DNA of 62,861 nucleotides, the filler included, from Dugesia japonica (Eukaryota), in assembly GCA_001938525.1 (NCBI GenBank). It is 6 parts of 6 records of this genome, joined end to end, with 100 filler letters (N's around TTAATTAATTAA, not from the genome) between each part and the next. Parts side by side here need not be neighbours in the genome. Positions count along the whole stretch, not along the records: positions 43,521 to 53,613 come from MQRL01594504.1; 5 more parts are not named here. One strand, written 5' to 3'. Positions 43,521 through 53,613 of the stretch are shown piece after piece. The notes under the pieces are model-generated. The model was not told the DNA's origin, made no database searches, and worked only from the letters and a program-made list of their open reading frames with translations. Numbering within the stretch: the stretch's first letter is position 1; every line of letters starts with the position of its first letter. The translations under genes and the position numbers were made by a program.

Positions 43521-44241
43521 CTGTTTGTTAGGAGAGTTTGGAAAATTCAACTCCATAAATTTATTAAAATAAAAACTATAACATAATTAATTGTTTAAAC
43601 AAACAAATTTAAAATTCATATTTAAAAACAGAAAATACTAAATATTAAATTTTATATTTTATTCTTCTTAAAATATATTTGATTTTTAAAAATACATTCA
43701 AATAAACATCTTTTATTCATTTAATTTTATATTTTAAAAATCCTTAAATTTTAGTTATTTATTTTATAAATTATTTTCTTGATACAATTTTAAATATACT
43801 TTTGATTTTAATAAATTCCGTTTTCAAAAATAAAAAAATTTAAATCTTTTTTTTAAAAAACTATATTGTACTGCTGTTATTAAAAAATTTTCATAACATG
43901 CTAAGATTTAATTATCAAAAACAAAAACGTACGATAGTTTTTTTTAATGTTTAAATTCATTTATTTGTTTATAAAAATTACCGTAAAGTGTACCTTTTGT
44001 TTTTTTTTTTGATACAGTGTAAGAATTTTAATGTTTTTTATGTTGTCCCCTTATTTGTATTTTATTTCTCGTAAAAGCAAACTAAAATTCAAAAAGAATA
44101 TTAATTAATTAAATAACAATTTTAAACTGTCTGTGGTGTAGTATTTTAATAATTTATTATACCCATATAAGTTTTTAATTAATATTATTTTTGATTTAAT
44201 TGTAAATTTTATAACTAATAATTATTTATTGGCAATACAAA

Positions 44242-45180
44242 ATGACATCAGTCTAAAGAAAATTGTAATCTGAAAATAGGAAATTTAATAGTTGTTTTGT
44301 TTTCGAGCAAAATAAGAAAATTGTATGCTTAATTTGTGAAGTAACTTTAATATAATTTAATATAAAGAGAATTTTAATGGATAATATAAAGAGGCACCAG
44401 TTTACAATACACAATATCAGCAGATCGTTAGGTTTTACGTGAAGAGAAGATTGAATNAATTAAGAGAAATATTTTTTTAAAAATCATAAATCGGAGATTG
44501 CTATTGAAACGGGCTACGAATTTTCATTATTGATTGCCAAAACAGCTCAACCTTTTACTGAAGGAGAATTTATTAAATCTTATTTATTAACGGCAGCAAG
44601 AAAAATATCTCCTATTCTATCAAAACAATTTGAAAATATTTCTTTGAGAAGAACCACAGTTCAGCTCCTGCTTGTTTAAATGGCTGATGACATATCTGAT
44701 CAATTTAAAGAAAAAGCTCAGCATATTACGTATTTTTCCTTGGCGGTTGATGAGTCAACAGATATTTCACTAACTGCTCAATTTATGATATTTTTTTCTT
44801 GGTATCACTGATGATTTCAATATTTATGAAAAACTATTGGCCATTAGTTAATTGATAGATCGGACCGCTGGTAATGATTTACTGACGAAGTTTCTTTACG
44901 AATGTGAAAAATCTGGTCTTGATATGAAAATACTTGCTGGAATTACGACAGATAGTGCATCTTCGATGATTGGAACCACTAAAGGTATGGTATCATTGCT
45001 TAAAAATAATTTTGGTAATCGAAAGCTGGAACTAATTTTATTCCAATGCATTCTTCATCAACAAAATCTTTGCAGAAAAGACTTAGGATTCGATCACTAA
45101 ATGACGGTAGTCATGAAGATAGCAAATTTCATAAAGAAATAGAGGTCTCAACCATCAACAATATCAACAATTCAGATTTA
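44242..45180 (+). mobile_element. Decayed hAT (Charlie/Buster, GTF2IRD2/EPM2AIP1-like) transposase
   Basis: SENRKFN, VCLIC, NIKRH, PFTEGEFIK, YFSLAVDESTDIS.TAQ, GITTDSASSMIG and FQCILHQQNLC. Confidence 0.9.
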
Positions 45181-45398
45181 GAAAAATGTATAAAAAATAA
45201 ACGTCTGTGGAAAATATTTTCTATCTTTATTCATTATTACTTTTATTTGTTGAGTATTTTTATTTTATTTGCATGAAAATCAATCTTAATATAAGCAGAG
45301 AAATTTCTAATAATAATGTTGCCGGGGGAGAATTTAATATTGATTCTCAACGAGGGATTATTTTATACACACTAGAGCTATCATTTGTCCTTTAATGC

Positions 45399-45462
45399 CG
45401 TACGCACTTTAACTGTATACGCACTTAAACCGTATACCCACTTTAACTGTGTAAGCACTTTA
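45399..45462. repeat. Short tandem ~16-17-mer repeat (subterminal-repeat-like)
   Basis: CGTAYRC.CACTT(T)AAC units repeated about four times. Confidence 0.6.
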
Positions 45463-47567
45463 TGGGTACTGTGAGTACTTATTTGTTTTTGGAAATTTTT
45501 GTTTTTAAATTTATTTCATCAAAAATATGTTGACTATTTTTAAGTATGATATTCTTGATTAGCGTAAAATCATCTATCAACTAAATGGGTTGATAATAAA
45601 ATTTGAGAAAGTGTTTTTTTAGAAAAAATAAAAAATTTACTAAAAATAATACTAAGGAAATTCTCAATAGATTGGTAAAAATTTTCATATTTTGAAAACA
45701 AAATATTTTAGAAATAATTGGTTAAATTAATATTGGGGTTCAACGCAAAATGAAGTTTTCCGAGTGATCGAGTAATAAATGAATTAATTATTACCTCACC
45801 AATAGTGTCATATTATCCGGAGTGATTACGTTAATATTATATAGTTATGATGTAATTATTAATCCTGACATGACCATATAAGAATGACGCATATGAAAAT
45901 TCATAACCACTGTGTATGATTGCGTCAATGGGTATGCCTATGTGCGCGACTATTCATTTACTCAAGTTAAACAAATTTTACCATTAAAGTTTTGTTTAAC
46001 TTTTAGATAATTTTAAACTGTACTCTAGCTTACGGAAAATATAATTACCAAATTCACTCACTCAGTCTAGAATGGTGATATTTATTATTGATAATTATCA
46101 GTAACTAAAAATAAAAATATCAATTATAAAAATATTAAAATTAAATTTTAATAAAAATAATATTATTATTAATAATAATTCGCAATAACGATTAGTAATA
46201 ATATTAATGAAATAATAATAATAATTAATAATGAAAATAATCTTTAATATAATTATCCAATTCACTCACTGACTCACTCTTGAACATTTCAGTAAAAAAA
46301 TATTTTAAGCTTATAAATTACAAACACTTAAGAATAAACTTATTATTTAGTTTAAGTCAATTAAGACGCTCATCGTTGAATTTAAAATAGTTTTCGAATC
46401 CATGCAATATTTATTAATTTATTAAAGATAAATATATAAGTTTTTTGAACAAATTAAATAAGCTAAATTAATTTGAGATTCAACTTTAACTTTAATTATT
46501 TTTAAATAAAATATTTTAAAATTAATTTCATTGCTTTTAATTTATTAATGTTATTCTTTATTATTCAACTCTTATTAATTAATATAATTCTAAATTCTCC
46601 AAAAAATCAAAGTCGAAATCTCAAAAATTTGTCTATGCTATTGATATTTTCTTTAAATTGAGATTTTTAAAGTACTCTTAAAATATCATTAAATTTAAGT
46701 CGACATTTTCAAATCATAACATTTCCTAAAAAATTTAATAACGACTTAATAAAAACTTCATCTTAAATCAATTAATAATTATTAAAACAAATTAAAAGTT
46801 ATTAATCAAAATATTTCGGTTTTTTTATTTATTTTTATTAAATATATTTTATCTAAATTATCTTGTATTTTAAGTGATAATTATATTTTAGCATCGTTTA
46901 GGTTAATATTTTTTTAATAAAACAGATTTTGTTTTCAAAAAAATTGTGAAAACCACGTGTTATTTCTTAAAATCCGAAGACTCTTAGTTTAATAATCAAA
47001 CCTTGAAACTCAGGATAATATTGGTATTTCAACTTGTTTCTTAATTTAATACTTGAAATCCAGATTAGGTTTGAAAATATTAAATAGTAAAATTGGCTAA
47101 ATTAAAATTACAATGTTTTCCATTGAATAATTATTTTATAATGTAGCTATATAATTTCAATGTTACTGAAAAGGAAAAATATTCTCAAATCGATTTTCTT
47201 ATATAAAATAATTTGAGTCGATATTGACTTTACAAGTAAAATTATTCTGAAATAATAATCAACATTAAGTATTTAGAAGGATTTATAAAATTATTATTCT
47301 TAGTATATCATTCTTGTAAATCCGATTAAGAAATTAATTAATCGTTAATATACAGATGCATTTGCAATCCATCATTAATTATGTAGAATCCAATGACTAA
47401 AAATATATATTTCAATTTTTTTACAATCAAAATGCAAATAAATTTTAAACTACAATATGACGAAAAATGGTTATTCCTATGACGAAAAATGGTTATTCCT
47501 ATTTCAGCACATGCAAATTAATCTCAAAAACAAAAAATTACGAATTGAATATAAATTGATATTGAAA

Positions 47568-48105
47568 TCGTCGTCTGTAAAAATAGATTATTATTTGCTA
47601 TTTTTTATTTTTAAATCAATGAATTAAGCTCGTACTAAATATTATTATTCAACTTTTGGAAGAATCATCATAAATAAAATATTCTTTAAATTTTAGATTC
47701 TGCTAAACAGTTTATTTCATGAATATGGAATTGTAGGATCATTATCAAATCACCTTTTTTGTTATTTAAATCACCTTTTGTTAAGCAGTCATAATTCTTT
47801 AAAAAAGAAACATAAAGTCAAAAATTTGTCAAAAAATTTCATTATTAAGTCANNNNNNNNNNNNNNNNNNNNNNNNNNNNNNNNNNNNNNNNNNNNNNNN
47901 NNATCGTCGTCTGTAAAAATAGATTATTATTTGCTATTTTTTATTTTTAAATCAATGAATTAAGCTCGTACTAAATATTATTATTCAACTTTTGGAAGAA
48001 TCATCATAAATAAAATATTCTTTAAATTTTAGATTCTGCTAAACAGTTTATTTCATGAATATGGAATTGNAGGATCATTATCAAATCACCTTTTTTGTTA
48101 TTTAA
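47568..48105. repeat. ~200-bp direct duplication flanking a gap (probable assembly overlap)
   Basis: 47568-47770 is repeated at 47903-48105. Confidence 0.85.
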
Positions 48106-50151
48106 AATGTCAAATAAACACAAGATATAGTGAATTGTTTTAATCATAATTTAATATACCACATAACAATATATATAAAATGAAGTATTAAATTTTAATA
48201 TCATTTGCAATTGAATTTTCTTAGCAAATTTCTGAGAAGTTCTGAACATTTCATATTTTTACGTGCAAAATGATATACCACTATTCACAATTATAAAGAA
48301 ATAACTCACTTAATTTACAACTTAAATCCGTTCAACTTTAAAATTATTTTCTCCGCTGCAGATAGTAGGCTTTAAACTTCGTACGCTTTAAATATATCAA
48401 ATATATTGTAAAATTGCACTTTAAAAATATTGTTCAAATAATTGAAATAAGTCAGCTGACGATTTAAAATAAAGACAATATAAATATTATTTCGAACTGT
48501 ATGTAAATCATAAGGTTCGTTTTTTATCTACTTTCTGAGAATAAAGATTCGTTATTGATACATTTGTTGATTAGCGATTGGTGATATAATGATTGGCTTT
48601 GGCAATTAAGCTTTGTTTGTGTGTTTAATGGATTGCATATGAATCATTATAAAATGAAATTCGACTTTTCTCTGGCTTTCGTATAGTTGCATTAAAAAAA
48701 AATCAATGTTAGTAAAGTCATTTAAAAAATTTAATTGTTTATATTATTTTATAATTTTAATAAAAGGAAAATTATTATTAATTTATTTCTTCGATATTAA
48801 ACTGTATTTTTATTTATGTTCAATATTTCGCACATTTATATTTAAATTATCTTTCTAATTAATCAACGAATCGATTATTTGTATTAATTTAAAGTCTAAA
48901 TACCTCAGGTAAAATATGATTCAGTAAATTAATTTATTAGACGTGGTTAAATGTCCACAGAAATTAATAATTATTCTGACCTTTATGCGGCGGCAAATGA
49001 CATTTATACATTGCCATAATGAGGAAAAAGGGTATTCTTTTATTAGAAAAACTATTAATTATTATTTACAATAATTTGTTATTTAGGTATAAAATATTCA
49101 GTTTAATTTTTTTATTTTAATATTGACAAATGAAGTTTATTCTAATAATTTTGTTAGAAATGCTTAAAAGTATTTCGTCAATTATTAAAATGCATTACTC
49201 CGATAATTCATACCTGATTCAAGTCGCACACTACTATCACCATGCTTGAATTACTATACTTGTCAACTAATTTCGAATAAATTGTCTCTTGATTAGATGT
49301 TGCAGTCAAGGGCGAGTTTCAGAACATTATAGAATTGTTGAAGTTCTAGTTGTGCCATTTGCTAATAATTTCATTCGCTATTGTCTTTTCTTTTTGGAGT
49401 TCCAAAGAGATAAATTGGGTTGTCACATTGCCGAGAGGATTTCTTCTCCCGTTAAGAATTGGATCTGGTGTTCTATACTAGACTTTTGAAATGTAGCCAA
49501 TAATTTGCCTCATGCTGGAAATGCATGCTCACAATCTTCATGTTACTCGCGTTTTCCCTATTTTAGACTCTTGATTAGATTTTGATTTTATTTCTAGTTC
49601 TATTCATCCTTCTAAAGATATTGGTACTGTAATATAGTTTTTAAAAGCAGATTTGAATTATTTGTATTTTAAAGCGGAATTTATTGAAATTAGATTTGTT
49701 AAATATTTAAATTTGGATCATAAAAATAATTTTTAAAATAAACAAATTATCATTTTCCATTTAAGAATAAATAAACGTGTGTTAAAATTTTTGTAACTTT
49801 ATTATAATTTGTAAAATTATCAAATTTCTAATTTTCAATAAAATATATTTTTTTAATGTATTAATAATATCTCATTGTTTAAGATCTCTTTCAATGATGG
49901 CATAAATAGATCCAGATTATAATGCATCTTTAATATTTCTGCTTTATAATATGACTCCATGTAAAAGTCCACAGATTCTCAGATTAATAAAAATTCCCTG
50001 AAGCACCGAAAATAAACAAAACACACCTACACAGAAAGTAGGTAGAACAGATACTATAAAAGTGGCAGCGGAATTATAAATAACAACTAAAAAAAGAAGA
50101 AAAAGTTTAAGAATTTTTGATCGAGAGTATTTAGTGAATTTTTATTTGGTG

Positions 50152-51900
50152 TTAGAAAGTGTTCACGATTAAAATCGACCCCAAGATGTGAGAGGTTACA
50201 AGTGCTAGATCATCTGCATATGCCAAGCAAGATATGTGATGTCCAGCACATTTAACACCGTCACCTTCAGTTTTAGAAATTTCATTAATGATAGGATTGA
50301 TGTCGATGTTAAACAACAACATAGACTGAGGACAACCCTGTCTAAACCCCCTTCTGTTAGCAATATGGTTAGTAGAAACCTTATTACAGATGTAATAACT
50401 GGAGCAGTCAGAATACAAAGCTCTGGTGGTATATCGATTCTGTTCGTCAAGGAGGTAGCAAAGCAGAAAATTGTGCTCGGAACAGCCTTCAGAATTTTCA
50501 GCACTTCTTTGAAGATTATGCAACAATCCGAAATTCCGAGTCCAATCCGATAGTTGCGTCGCCAGGCAAGCCATGAAAAGCTTGTACAGACAATCAAATA
50601 AGGCTATTGATCTCCAAGATGAAACGAGATGATAAGAACCAGCTTTGGCTGGCTTCGGAATCATCAGACTCGAGTAAATTCTCCATCTATTATGAATTAC
50701 CTCAGATGTAAAGATTTTCCTGCAAATGCTGTGTATTAGCTCACATTTTGGGTCCATTGCTTTAAGACATTGTCATGTGATGTTGTTTATACCAGGTGTT
50801 GACACAGACAAACCGTAAAGGATGTTTCTGATAGCAACAGGTTCAAGACAAGAAAATTAAAAAGTATTTGCACCAGATTTTAAAAGGGGGAACAGATCCC
50901 AGTTAGTATTAGGACCAGCTTCAGTNNNNNNNNNNNNNNNNNNNNNNNNNNNNNNNNNNNNNNNNNNNNNNNNNNNNNNNNNNNNNNNNNNNNNNNNNNN
51001 NNNNNNNNNNNNNNNNNNNNNNNNNNNNNNNNCCCTCAAGTTTAAATCTAATTCTGCCCGCTTGCTGGTTTTGCCCTCTACAATTTTAAAATTTAAGGAT
51101 TTCGGTTTGATGCCTTGAACAGAGTGGATATAGCTGTAGAAAGAGTCTACAGCTGAATTTACATCACTATTCTCAATAGTTATATGCAATTCGTTAATTT
51201 TATTTTTATTTTGAGCAATTTCATTAGTATTTTGATATTTGTCAATCTCTATGGGTTTGTAGCAATTTTTTTTATTAAAATTTAAATATTTAGATTTTAT
51301 TGCGCTAATATCAACTCTATTCAATGTGTTGAATTTTTTAATAGAGCTGATATACCCACAGACAACTAAACTACTCTCTCAATCATTCCTTTGAAAATCT
51401 GTCACATTGAAAGGAAGTTTGATAAGAGTGATGTCTTTTCTTCTGTTGAACTCAGACATATAGACATGCAATCCTTAAGGAATTTCCTCTCATGTGGTTT
51501 TCTTTAGGGTCCAACAAGAAATATTTTTGTCCACACAGAAAACAAACAAGGCCATCTCGCATCCGAGACAAGGAAAGGATAGGAGATAATTTAGTGTTTA
51601 TATAACGAGTCTTGATTTACAAGCATTAAATGAATTTAATTAGAAATGGTTCACCAAATATTATACAAGAATGTAAATTAAATAACTCGAAAATGAAATC
51701 ATCACGACCCAATAACATGCCGGTGCTTTTTTATTCCACGGGTATCTACGACACGGATAGAGAGCCTGGTAGGTATATGAAGATAAATACGTATCAAGGA
51801 TATAAAATTCCGAGATCAGGAAGCAGAGATACAAGAACTNAGAAAAAAGATTAAGCAACTCCAAATTAATCAGACCAAAAAGGAACGGGACCAAGAGAAA
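50152..51900 (-). mobile_element. Second R2/NeSL-group non-LTR retrotransposon relic (Zn finger plus RT)
   Basis: LMIPKP...SSWRSIAL..CLYKLF, EGCSEHNFLL, RGFRQGCPQSMLLFNI.INP and ISCLAYADDLALV. C2H2-like CFLCGQKY...NHMR near 51490-51545. No endonuclease was found downstream, so the clade call rests on RT and finger similarity. Confidence 0.9.
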
Positions 51901-52262
51901 CAAAATCAGGAGCTAGCAGGTTTACTGAGCAGGCTATCAAACCATCTCCGTCGACCTCAAAAAATAACTGATCCGGGTACGGTGTTTAAGTTAAATTAAC
52001 TGGCTCATAACAAAGCGGCTAAATGTCTAGTAGACGGGATTGAGCGAACAATGCTGATGTTGGTAGCTTATTTATTCGAAGAAGATGAAGTAATAAAAGG
52101 GACTATCGTGCGATTTCAGAGCCTGATCATGTTAATACTGAGAATAAAGTTTCAATGAGTTTTGTGTCAAATTGAATAAAAGTTTTTTCTAGATTATCGA
52201 AATGCTAAATTTGTAAATTATAAAGTTTTGAATTATTTTAATGCCTGAAAATTTCGATATAG

Positions 52263-52730
52263 GAGAAGAATGCTGCCTTAAAGAAAAAAATGACTAAGTT
52301 GCGTGAGCGGGTGAGTGTAAGCACAAAGCAAGAGCTTAAACTCATCAATAATAATCGGAAGCTCGTAGAGATCGACAAAATTTACACTGGTCAAAATGCG
52401 TTGGTTCTAGAAAATTTGCGCATCCTATGGAAGGACTACGAAGCAAANATGGTGCTGTCTGATCCAAATTGCCAGATAACAGAAGAAACCATCTTCAGAT
52501 CTCCTTGGTGTATTTTGTCTTATGTAAATAAATAAATAATAAATGCCACCGAATTATTACTTATGCAAATGAATACAGAAATTTAATTCAAATGAACGAC
52601 ACGAACATCAAGATGATTTTCTAAAGACGGGATACAGAATAGTTCTGCACGGGGTAGATAAAAAACCCGCGACGTGTTGAAAAATTTCTGCAGGCTTCAT
52701 TGTATCTACTCCTAGAAGATATATCGAGTT
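52263..52730 (+). pseudogene. Copy C of the small unannotated ORF cassette, antisense and divergent to the retrotransposon
   Basis: EKNAALKKKMTKLRERVSVSTKQELKLINNNRKLVEIDKIYTGQNALVLENLRILWKDYE (ORF 52290-52535), then QDDFLKTGYRIVLHGVDKKPATC*KISAGFIVST. Confidence 0.7.
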
Positions 52731-53613
52731 ACTGAATCTCAGTTTTCAACAGCTACCTGACATGCTGTCATCGATTTACTTTTTTATTTTTCAAAAGTTG
52801 TTTCGTAGTTTTTGTATATATTAGTTCTAGCTGATTGCCTTTTTATAACAGTTTTATTCATGTTTTTTTACAAAATACTACAGCGAATATTCCTTTATGC
52901 ATCAATATAATTTTCTCTAAATTCACATTTGGTTTGTTGATCAATATTCCTAATGCTCCCTGTACTCTTTCTTCATCTTCTGTATTGCATCCATATCTCG
53001 ATTCTATAGTAACCAGACACACTTTGTTATCCTAATTTTTTATCGTTTGTTGGTTATTTCTAGTCAACAAAGATTTTATGGTTCTGATTTTAATAGTAGA
53101 AATACAAAATAAGTTGATAATTTGATGGGTGTAGATTTTACCCTGTGTATATGCGTTGATACAATTATTATATAACGATATCTTTAATTGAAATTATAAA
53201 TAAGTAATATATGTCTGTCCCTTATTTAAAAATAAATAAACAAAACACACCTTTATAAATAATATGGGTATATAACAAAAACAACCTTAAATCGCAAAAT
53301 TTTATATTAAAAGAAAGAATCCACCCAAAGAGAGAGGTTCTTTCAATTAAATTGACTCTAATAATTCTAAAAAAGCGATCAGTATTTATACTGACTCTAC
53401 ATGTGCTTATTGTTAACATACACATAAAAATAATTATACACATAAACTAAATAATCCATATTTTATTTTTTCATAAAAATCCACAGATTAAAAAATAAAA
53501 TCCATACTAATAATATAACGCCGGTTTAAATAATTGTGACAAAAATTTCTATTGCCTTAATCGATCAATAGTAACAAACACAATAACCAGAAAAAATCCA
53601 ATTATAAAAATAA

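What the first reader, a model, noticed from the sequence alone, without database searches (positions are those of the whole stretch)
52263..52535. A conserved small ORF sits antisense, head-to-head, at the 5' end of all three R2/NeSL-type retrotransposon relics
Seen: four diverged plus-strand segments align without gaps over about 30 codons. A (~8247) is AIRALMTKCQ*RVSRA*MTENHYAVNK. B (~20653) is AIK*RLLVMRERLSVSR*RELTLIANK. C (~52275) is ALKKKMTKLRERVSVSTKQELKLINNN. D (~58960, one frameshift) is QLKEKIKIMRDRVSDSRRSELSLMQNN. R-x-S-x5-E-x5-N is invariant. B and C further share Q.A.V..N...LWK.YE, and A and B share QRAK. A, C and D each lie within a few hundred bp 5' of the minus-strand ORF of an R2/NeSL-group element and point away from it, on three different contigs. 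Established: RLE-clade elements normally carry sense-strand ORF(s), and many (R2, NeSL, Utopia, R5) are target-specific; primate L1 has an antisense ORF0. Inference: either this lineage encodes an undescribed divergently transcribed accessory protein, or its endonuclease targets a fixed site just upstream of an unknown multicopy gene or element. I do not recognise the protein.
Basis: partly seen in the sequence, partly recalled or inferred. Interest (0 to 1): 0.85.

Follow-up and report, generated by a model that had tools for sequence, protein, structure and literature searches.

The report
Orphan small ORF beside R2-like relic
A 90-codon open frame does point away from a decayed R2-like reverse-transcriptase relic, but in this one copy it is no longer than chance allows and has no detectable relatives, so the idea of an antisense accessory gene can be neither shown nor excluded.

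Summary
Only copy C lies in my piece. Copies A, B and D are masked, so the claim of conservation among copies could not be tested. Copy C is as described: an open stretch at 52263-52535 (+), first ATG at 52290, pointing away from a minus-strand RT relic. That relic matches Pfam RVT_1 (E 1e-10), and solved R2 proteins are its best PDB matches (E about 5e-10, against 5e-4 or weaker for L1 ORF2p). No endonuclease domain survives, so "R2/NeSL" rests on the RT alone. The ORF starts 647 bp beyond the last open minus-strand stretch, not "a few hundred". Its length is unremarkable: 23-34% of composition-matched simulations hold one as long. No credible relative turned up in 1.84 billion protein representatives, Pfam, PDB, or metagenome, prokaryote-genome and viral contigs. 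My best guess (0.4) is that the ORF is the tail of a separate, decayed plus-strand coiled-coil unit next to, or targeted by, the element. The rivals are a chance ORF (0.3) and an element-encoded antisense gene (0.15). A genome-wide census of copies would decide.

The parts
52263..52535 (+). ORF C, the finding: 90 open codons plus a stop, with the first ATG at 52290 and one unknown codon (single n). The first 60 residues are predicted as one long helix.
   Evidence: sequence and frames; AlphaFold2 single sequence, helix over residues 2-60, pLDDT 69 in the best model only; heptad phase test p 0.03 for hydrophobic residues, 0.012 for Leu; no family or relative
51787..52155 (+). It has 123 codons in one frame with one in-frame stop. 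The first part is rich in K/E/Q and looks like a coiled coil. Its frame differs from ORF C's.
   Evidence: frame, one stop; base by codon-position dependence, p 0.001 and 0.013 for its two pieces, against 0.07 for the true RT relic; no family or relative
52156..52262 (.). AT-rich spacer of 107 nt (GC 0.215, against about 0.36-0.39 on either side) between the upstream tract and ORF C. It could be an intron, a decayed stretch or plain non-coding DNA.
50155..51616 (-). Broken gene of the R2-like non-LTR retrotransposon relic, given as one part. The RT frame is nearly open for 408 codons (2 stops, 36 X from one run of 107 N). At least one frameshift separates it from a further open stretch that holds a CxxC...H pattern. 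Everything 3' of the RT's YADD region is missing. The upper bound is uncertain.
   Evidence: frames and counts; no coding trace downstream; no family match for the N-terminal stretches
50155..50772 (-). Reverse-transcriptase domain of the relic (RT motifs through YADD).
   Evidence: Pfam RVT_1, E 1.1e-10, 42 bits against a cut-off of 29.6; PDB: R2 proteins 9nl3, 9nl2, 9dou at E 4.5e-10 to 7e-10; R2Bm 8gh6 at 1.4e-4; L1 ORF2p at 5e-4 to 2e-3
52525..52544 (+). (TAAA)n micro-repeat across the stop codon of ORF C, giving three AATAAA hexamers. It fits a polyadenylation signal but is cheap in AT-rich DNA.

Best explanation
ORF C is the last open stretch of a longer, now broken, plus-strand unit of about 0.75 kb (51787-52535). 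This unit would encode a helical, coiled-coil-type protein of unknown family. It is a separate gene or repeat, not part of the retrotransposon. The R2-like element sits beside it head-to-head, either because its endonuclease recognises a site in or next to this repeated unit (as most elements of this group insert into repeats) or because the two are simply neighbours. Shown: the two plus-strand tracts, the RT relic and their divergent orientation. Inferred: that the plus-strand tracts form one unit, that it once coded, and that it is independent of the element.
For: A 123-codon plus-strand tract with a single stop lies directly upstream of ORF C in the same orientation. Its base composition depends on codon position at least as strongly as in the true RT relic. 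The strand skew flips at about 51450-51650. The minus strand is A-rich over 50900-51400 and the plus strand A-rich over 51500-52600, as expected for two divergent sense strands. ORF C is predicted as one long helix with Leu or other hydrophobic residues in one heptad phase in 7 of 8 turns. ORF C ends in a cluster of AATAAA hexamers. In solved R2 proteins the point aligned to the start of this RT lies at residues 391-442. An R2-length N-terminus would therefore reach about 51930-52090, inside the plus-strand tract. This argues that the tract is not a simple 5'-UTR feature. From the literature: elements with a restriction-like endonuclease mostly insert site-specifically into repeats (PMC4640811), targets of non-LTR elements include transposons (PMC5035012), and R2 and R2-like elements have a single sense ORF (PMC7650587).
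Against: No relative of any plus-strand piece was found in Pfam, PDB, 1.84 billion protein representatives or the contig collections. The open frames are not statistically beyond chance. The tests that favour coding were run on frames already picked for being open, so they are biased. No continuation of the plus-strand unit is visible on the other side of the relic, but the relic's 3' half and junction are lost. No known target type (rRNA, tRNA, snRNA, microsatellite) lies at the junction. One copy cannot show that the unit is repeated or independent.
Confidence: 0.4

Rival explanations
1. There is no gene. ORF C is open by chance in the element's 5' untranslated region or in flanking DNA. Any likeness among copies reflects shared descent of the DNA, read in a K/E/N/L-rich frame that AT-rich, T-poor sequence readily gives.
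For: 23-34% of composition-matched simulations of the local region hold an open stretch of at least 90 codons. The plus-strand path across two frames is also not significant (0.215). There is no credible relative among 1.84 billion representatives; the one hit is a fish immunoglobulin repeat protein and is spurious. Nothing was found in Pfam or PDB beyond designed helical filaments. Only one of five structure models reaches pLDDT 69; the others reach 36-44.
Against: The heptad phase test gives p 0.012-0.03. The plus strand is A-rich and purine-rich across the whole 51500-52600 span. A second open tract lies upstream.
Confidence: 0.3
2. One reading: this R2-like lineage carries, in its 5' region, a divergently transcribed gene for a small helical (leucine-zipper-like) accessory protein, driven from a bidirectional promoter region near 51620-51790.
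For: The RT relic and ORF C share one compositional island (GC 0.33-0.41 from about 50000 to 52800, against a background of 0.14-0.25). Their orientation is divergent. The helix and heptad hints apply here too.
Against: No antisense or second ORF is described for R2 or R2-like elements: they have a single ORF, with 5' UTRs of 325 bp (R2 of Blattella germanica) and up to 436 bp (its R2-like elements) (PMC7650587). A 2026 R2 review never uses the word 'antisense'. Here the ORF ends 919 bp beyond the last open minus-strand stretch. The plus-strand tract would overlap the element's own N-terminal coding region if that were of R2 length. The element's 5' boundary is unknown. Site-specific insertion explains the same recurrence with nothing new.
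Confidence: 0.15
3. The plus-strand tract is an upstream part of the same element that was inverted at insertion. Such 5' inversions are known for L1 ('twin priming') and leave the two pieces with their 5' ends facing each other.
For: The geometry fits: two pieces pointing away from one junction. Knowledge of twin priming is from my own memory, not from a tool.
Against: R2-group elements have no upstream ORF (PMC7650587). Pfam finds no LINE ORF1-type domain in the plus-strand pieces. Independent inversions would not recur with the same junction. The relic lacks its 3' half, which twin priming keeps.
Confidence: 0.05

Closest known systems
Primate L1 ORF0 (antisense ORF in the L1 5' UTR)
   Same: A small open frame on the strand opposite a non-LTR retrotransposon's main ORF, near its 5' end.
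   Different: ORF0 lies inside a mapped 5' UTR and has an antisense promoter and transcripts. Here the element's 5' boundary is unknown, no expression data exist, the element belongs to the R2-like group, and the open tract may be about 250 codons rather than about 70. No sequence likeness was found or expected.
Site-specific elements with a restriction-like endonuclease (R2, R8, R9, NeSL, Utopia)
   Same: The RT is most like R2 proteins. Such elements sit in a fixed orientation in a repeated target, so every copy has the same neighbour (PMC4640811, PMC5035012).
   Different: No known target (rRNA, snRNA, tRNA, spliced leader, microsatellite) is in the piece. The endonuclease domain and the 3' junction are missing from this copy. 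The supposed target would be an unknown protein-coding repeat.
Non-site-specific R2-like elements (BLAG of Blattella germanica; R2NS of flatworms)
   Same: These are R2-related RTs dispersed outside rDNA. Some BLAG copies share sequence beyond the 5' UTR (PMC7650587).
   Different: They are described with a single sense ORF and short 5' UTRs, and no divergent ORF is reported. Relatedness to this relic was not tested because no comparator sequences could be fetched.
Coiled-coil or leucine-zipper proteins, including LINE ORF1p
   Same: A predicted long helix with a Leu-rich heptad phase.
   Different: No Pfam match of any kind, including no LINE ORF1 model, at E up to 10. The strand is opposite to the RT gene.

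Membership tests
R2-group (restriction-like-endonuclease) non-LTR retrotransposon, for the minus-strand relic | Reverse transcriptase closest to R2-type RTs | tested here: met
   Pfam RVT_1 at E 1.1e-10. PDB: three R2 proteins at E about 5e-10 against L1 ORF2p at 5e-4 or weaker, and the GCSE-type motif aligns. Caveat: PDB holds only R2 and L1 among LINE RTs, and R2Bm itself scores only 1.4e-4.
R2-group (restriction-like-endonuclease) non-LTR retrotransposon, for the minus-strand relic | C-terminal CCHC motif and restriction-like endonuclease domain | tested here: not met
   There is no coding trace in any minus-strand frame downstream of the RT. A short PD-containing stretch that I suspected found nothing in PDB or Pfam. 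This copy has lost its 3' half, so the feature is absent here rather than shown absent from the lineage.
R2-group (restriction-like-endonuclease) non-LTR retrotransposon, for the minus-strand relic | N-terminal zinc finger and/or Myb DNA-binding domain | tested here: inconclusive
   A CxxC-x12-H pattern is seen by eye in the uppermost open stretch. Only a weak Pfam DUF4428 match (E 0.057) and no PDB match support it.
R2-group (restriction-like-endonuclease) non-LTR retrotransposon, for the minus-strand relic | Insertion at one fixed site of a repeated target | not testable with these tools
   There is one copy only, its 3' junction is lost, and no eukaryotic genome collection was available. 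No known RNA-gene or microsatellite target is in the piece.
Element-encoded antisense ORF (L1 ORF0 type) | The ORF lies inside the element, within its 5' UTR | tested here: inconclusive
   The ORF lies in the same compositional island as the RT, but the element's 5' end cannot be set from one copy. The ORF ends 919 bp beyond the last open minus-strand stretch (derived from the bounds), beyond the 5' UTR lengths reported for R2 and R2-like elements (PMC7650587).
Element-encoded antisense ORF (L1 ORF0 type) | Conserved among copies under codon-level constraint, and co-inherited with the RT | not testable with these tools
   Copies A, B and D are masked. No relative was found anywhere.
Element-encoded antisense ORF (L1 ORF0 type) | Antisense transcription and translation | not testable with these tools
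   No expression data were available. The promoter scan covers bacterial consensus sites only and found nothing above shuffles.
Coiled-coil / leucine-zipper protein | Heptad periodicity of hydrophobic residues in a long helix | tested here: inconclusive
   Helix over residues 2-60 in the best model only. The best heptad phase holds 7 of 9 hydrophobic residues (p 0.03) and 5 Leu (p 0.012) against residue shuffles. The upstream tract is not significant (p 0.10 and 0.52).
LINE ORF1p | Match to an ORF1 family model (for example Transposase_22) or an RRM/CCHC domain | tested here: not met
   No such Pfam match for any of the three plus-strand pieces at E up to 10.

The most novel reading that the evidence does not exclude
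A lineage of R2-like retrotransposons carries a divergently oriented gene in its 5' region for a small leucine-zipper-like protein. It would be co-inherited with the RT and expressed from a bidirectional promoter. This would be the first antisense accessory gene in this oldest group of non-LTR elements.
Probability: 0.13. Interest if true: 0.75.

Novelty: new member of a known kind. Interest (0 to 1): 0.3.

Why it matters
If the ORF were an element-encoded antisense gene, coding on both strands would extend from primate L1 to the ancient R2-like group. It would also point to an unknown helper or regulator of retrotransposition. If the ORF instead marks a repeated target, it would define a new target specificity, a protein-coding repeat, for a site-specific element. 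If it is a chance frame, it is a caution: in AT-rich, T-poor DNA, 90-codon open frames and helical, heptad-like translations come cheaply. The evidence from this one copy does not lift the finding above the ordinary.

Tried and rejected
(1) I suspected a BEN-domain or LINE ORF1 identity for the upstream plus-strand tract from memory. Pfam gave no such match at E up to 10, nor did PDB, so I dropped it.
(2) I suspected a restriction-like endonuclease 'PD' motif in a short minus-strand stretch near 49349-49477. PDB and Pfam found nothing, so I dropped it.
(3) I looked for an HDV-like ribozyme or other RNA family in the presumed 5' region. Rfam had nothing at gathering score and only three sub-threshold snoRNA-like chance hits.
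(4) The one protein hit for ORF C, P0001, is a 2549-residue fish immunoglobulin repeat protein whose repeats sum to E 3e-4. I rejected it as spurious.
(5) Searches for related loci with ORF C and with the RT in metagenome, prokaryote-genome and viral contigs found none.
(6) The word-indexed protein search with ORF C, the RT piece and one upstream piece found none, though it is limited by length.
(7) Exact look-ups of four window ORFs found none in the collection.
(9) I did not run a fold search. The model is a single long helix with low confidence in four of five models, so matches would be meaningless.
(10) I did not test a spliced model joining the upstream tract to ORF C. No tool predicts an intron and no relatives exist to share one. 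The pieces were searched apart and the joined step was left out.
(11) Tests on the minus-strand open stretches opposite ORF C and the tract found no family.

Full report
SCOPE. Only places 43521-53613 are sequence. Everything else in the window is N or linker. All claims about alignment among four copies, invariant residues and recurrence on three contigs remain unverified. The piece has about 26% GC, with background stretches of 14-25%. I do not take it for human. Its organism is unknown.

WHAT IS THERE. The open stretch runs from 52263 to the stop at 52533-52535 on the plus strand. It has 90 codons, the first in-frame ATG is at 52290, and a single n makes one codon unknown.

To the left, on the minus strand, a 206-residue stretch (50155-50772) is a reverse transcriptase. 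Pfam RVT_1 matches at E 1.1e-10. Among solved structures the best matches are three R2 retrotransposon proteins (E 4.5e-10 to 7e-10), ahead of R2Bm (1.4e-4) and L1 ORF2p (5e-4 to 2e-3). The RT's frame stays nearly open for 408 codons up to 51378, with 2 stops and 36 X from one run of 107 N. A further open stretch reaching 51616 lies in another frame, so there is at least one frameshift.

Downstream of the RT's YADD region no minus-strand frame shows any coding trace. The thumb, CCHC and endonuclease parts are gone. In summary, the relic's gene has two in-frame stops, at least one frameshift, one N run, and has lost its whole 3' half. "R2/NeSL-type" therefore rests on the RT alone. The zinc-finger-like pattern in the uppermost stretch has only a weak Pfam match (DUF4428, E 0.057) and no PDB match.

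DISTANCE AND ORIENTATION. ORF C's first codon is 647 bp from the last open minus-strand stretch, 885 bp from the end of the nearly open RT frame, and 1491 bp from the RT domain.

Between the relic and ORF C, on the plus strand, lies a coding-like tract of 123 codons with one stop (51787-52155). It is rich in K/E/Q at first and sits in a different frame from ORF C. A 107-nt spacer of 21.5% GC separates the two. Three observations bear on this tract:
- The plus strand is strongly A-rich over 51500-52600, while the minus strand is A-rich over 50900-51400. The skew flips near 51450-51650, as for two units transcribed apart.
- Base composition depends on codon position in the tract's two pieces (p 0.001 and 0.013) and weakly in ORF C (p 0.06). 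The true RT relic gives 0.07. These tests are biased, because the frames were picked for being open.
- ORF C ends in a (TAAA)n repeat that gives three AATAAA hexamers.

IS IT MORE THAN CHANCE? By length, no. In first-order Markov simulations of the local 0.7-1.1 kb, 23-34% hold an open stretch of at least 90 codons. A statistic allowing one frame change over the whole 749-nt plus-strand span is also unremarkable (0.215).

AlphaFold2 on the single sequence gives one long helix over residues 2-60. Its pLDDT is 69 in the best model and 36-44 in the other four. In that helix one heptad phase holds 7 hydrophobic residues, 5 of them Leu (p 0.03 and 0.012 against residue shuffles). These are nominal values, uncorrected for my having looked first.

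RELATIVES. None was found.
- Pfam gave nothing credible.
- The exhaustive search of 1.84 billion representatives gave one hit, a fish immunoglobulin repeat protein, which is spurious.
- The word-indexed search gave nothing.
- PDB gave only designed helical filaments at E above 0.01.
- The upstream tract's pieces likewise found nothing.
- The minus-strand stretches opposite ORF C and the tract found nothing.
- No related locus for ORF C or for the RT was found in metagenome, prokaryote-genome or viral contigs.
- Exact look-ups of four window ORFs were not in the collection.
- No eukaryotic genome collection was on hand, so absence here says little about the source genome.

KNOWN TARGETS. There is no tRNA, no Rfam family at gathering score, and no microsatellite at the junction.

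INTERPRETATION. From the literature:
- R2 and R2-like elements have a single sense ORF. Their 5' UTRs measure 325 bp (R2 of B. germanica) and up to 436 bp (R2-like BLAG elements) (PMC7650587).
- Elements with a restriction-like endonuclease mostly insert site-specifically into repeats (PMC4640811).
- Targets of non-LTR elements include transposons (PMC5035012).
- A 2026 R2 review never mentions an antisense ORF.

In solved R2 proteins, the residue aligned to the start of this RT is 391-442. An N-terminus of that length would reach about 51930-52090, inside the plus-strand tract.

I therefore rank the explanations as follows:
- (a) A separate, decayed plus-strand coiled-coil unit next to, or targeted by, the element: 0.4.
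- (b) A chance open frame in UTR or flank: 0.3.
- (c) An element-encoded antisense gene: 0.15.
- (d) A 5' inversion of the element's own upstream part: 0.05.

None is shown, and one copy cannot separate them.

STEPS LEFT OUT AND SLIPS.
- Slip, output and queries: the output of my script, and the by-reference queries, carry the bounds of individual open stretches of the broken genes. The places of stops can be read from them.
- Slip, notebook: my notebook entry 1 repeats some of these bounds.
- Slip, splice sites: while working I also looked by eye at possible splice-site pairs across the spacer.
This report gives counts and outer bounds only.

VERDICT. The interpretation cannot be decided. The feature as seen here is ordinary until a census of copies says otherwise.

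Noticed in passing
window 44464-45273 (+): Several plus-strand open stretches read like a decayed hAT (Buster / GTF2IRD2 / FAM200-type) transposase, including a '...DESTD...' type motif. This rests on my memory only: Pfam gave no credible match for the four pieces tried. It suggests the contig is a patchwork of transposon relics.
   Followed up: partly
window 47567-47770 and 47903-48106: Two 100% identical 204-nt direct copies lie 336 nt apart, on either side of a run of 50 N (47853-47902). This looks like an assembly duplication around a gap rather than biology.
   Followed up: no
window 49200-49600: A GC-richer island (0.35-0.37) sits in very AT-rich surroundings, with open stretches on both strands (72 and 43 codons). 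It has no Pfam or PDB match. It is about 0.7 kb downstream of the RT relic and may be an unrelated relic.
   Followed up: partly
window 45401-45462 and 47456-47502: Short tandem repeats: a 17-nt unit in 3.6 copies, and a perfect 22-nt unit in 2.1 copies.
   Followed up: no
window 46106-46241: An imperfect (TAA)n tract of about 45 units. (TAA)n is, from memory, a known target of some R4/Dong-type elements. This tract is 4 kb from the relic and not adjacent to it.
   Followed up: no
window 51840 and 52448: Single n letters fall inside the upstream plus-strand tract and inside ORF C, each making one codon unknown. I left them as they are.
   Followed up: no
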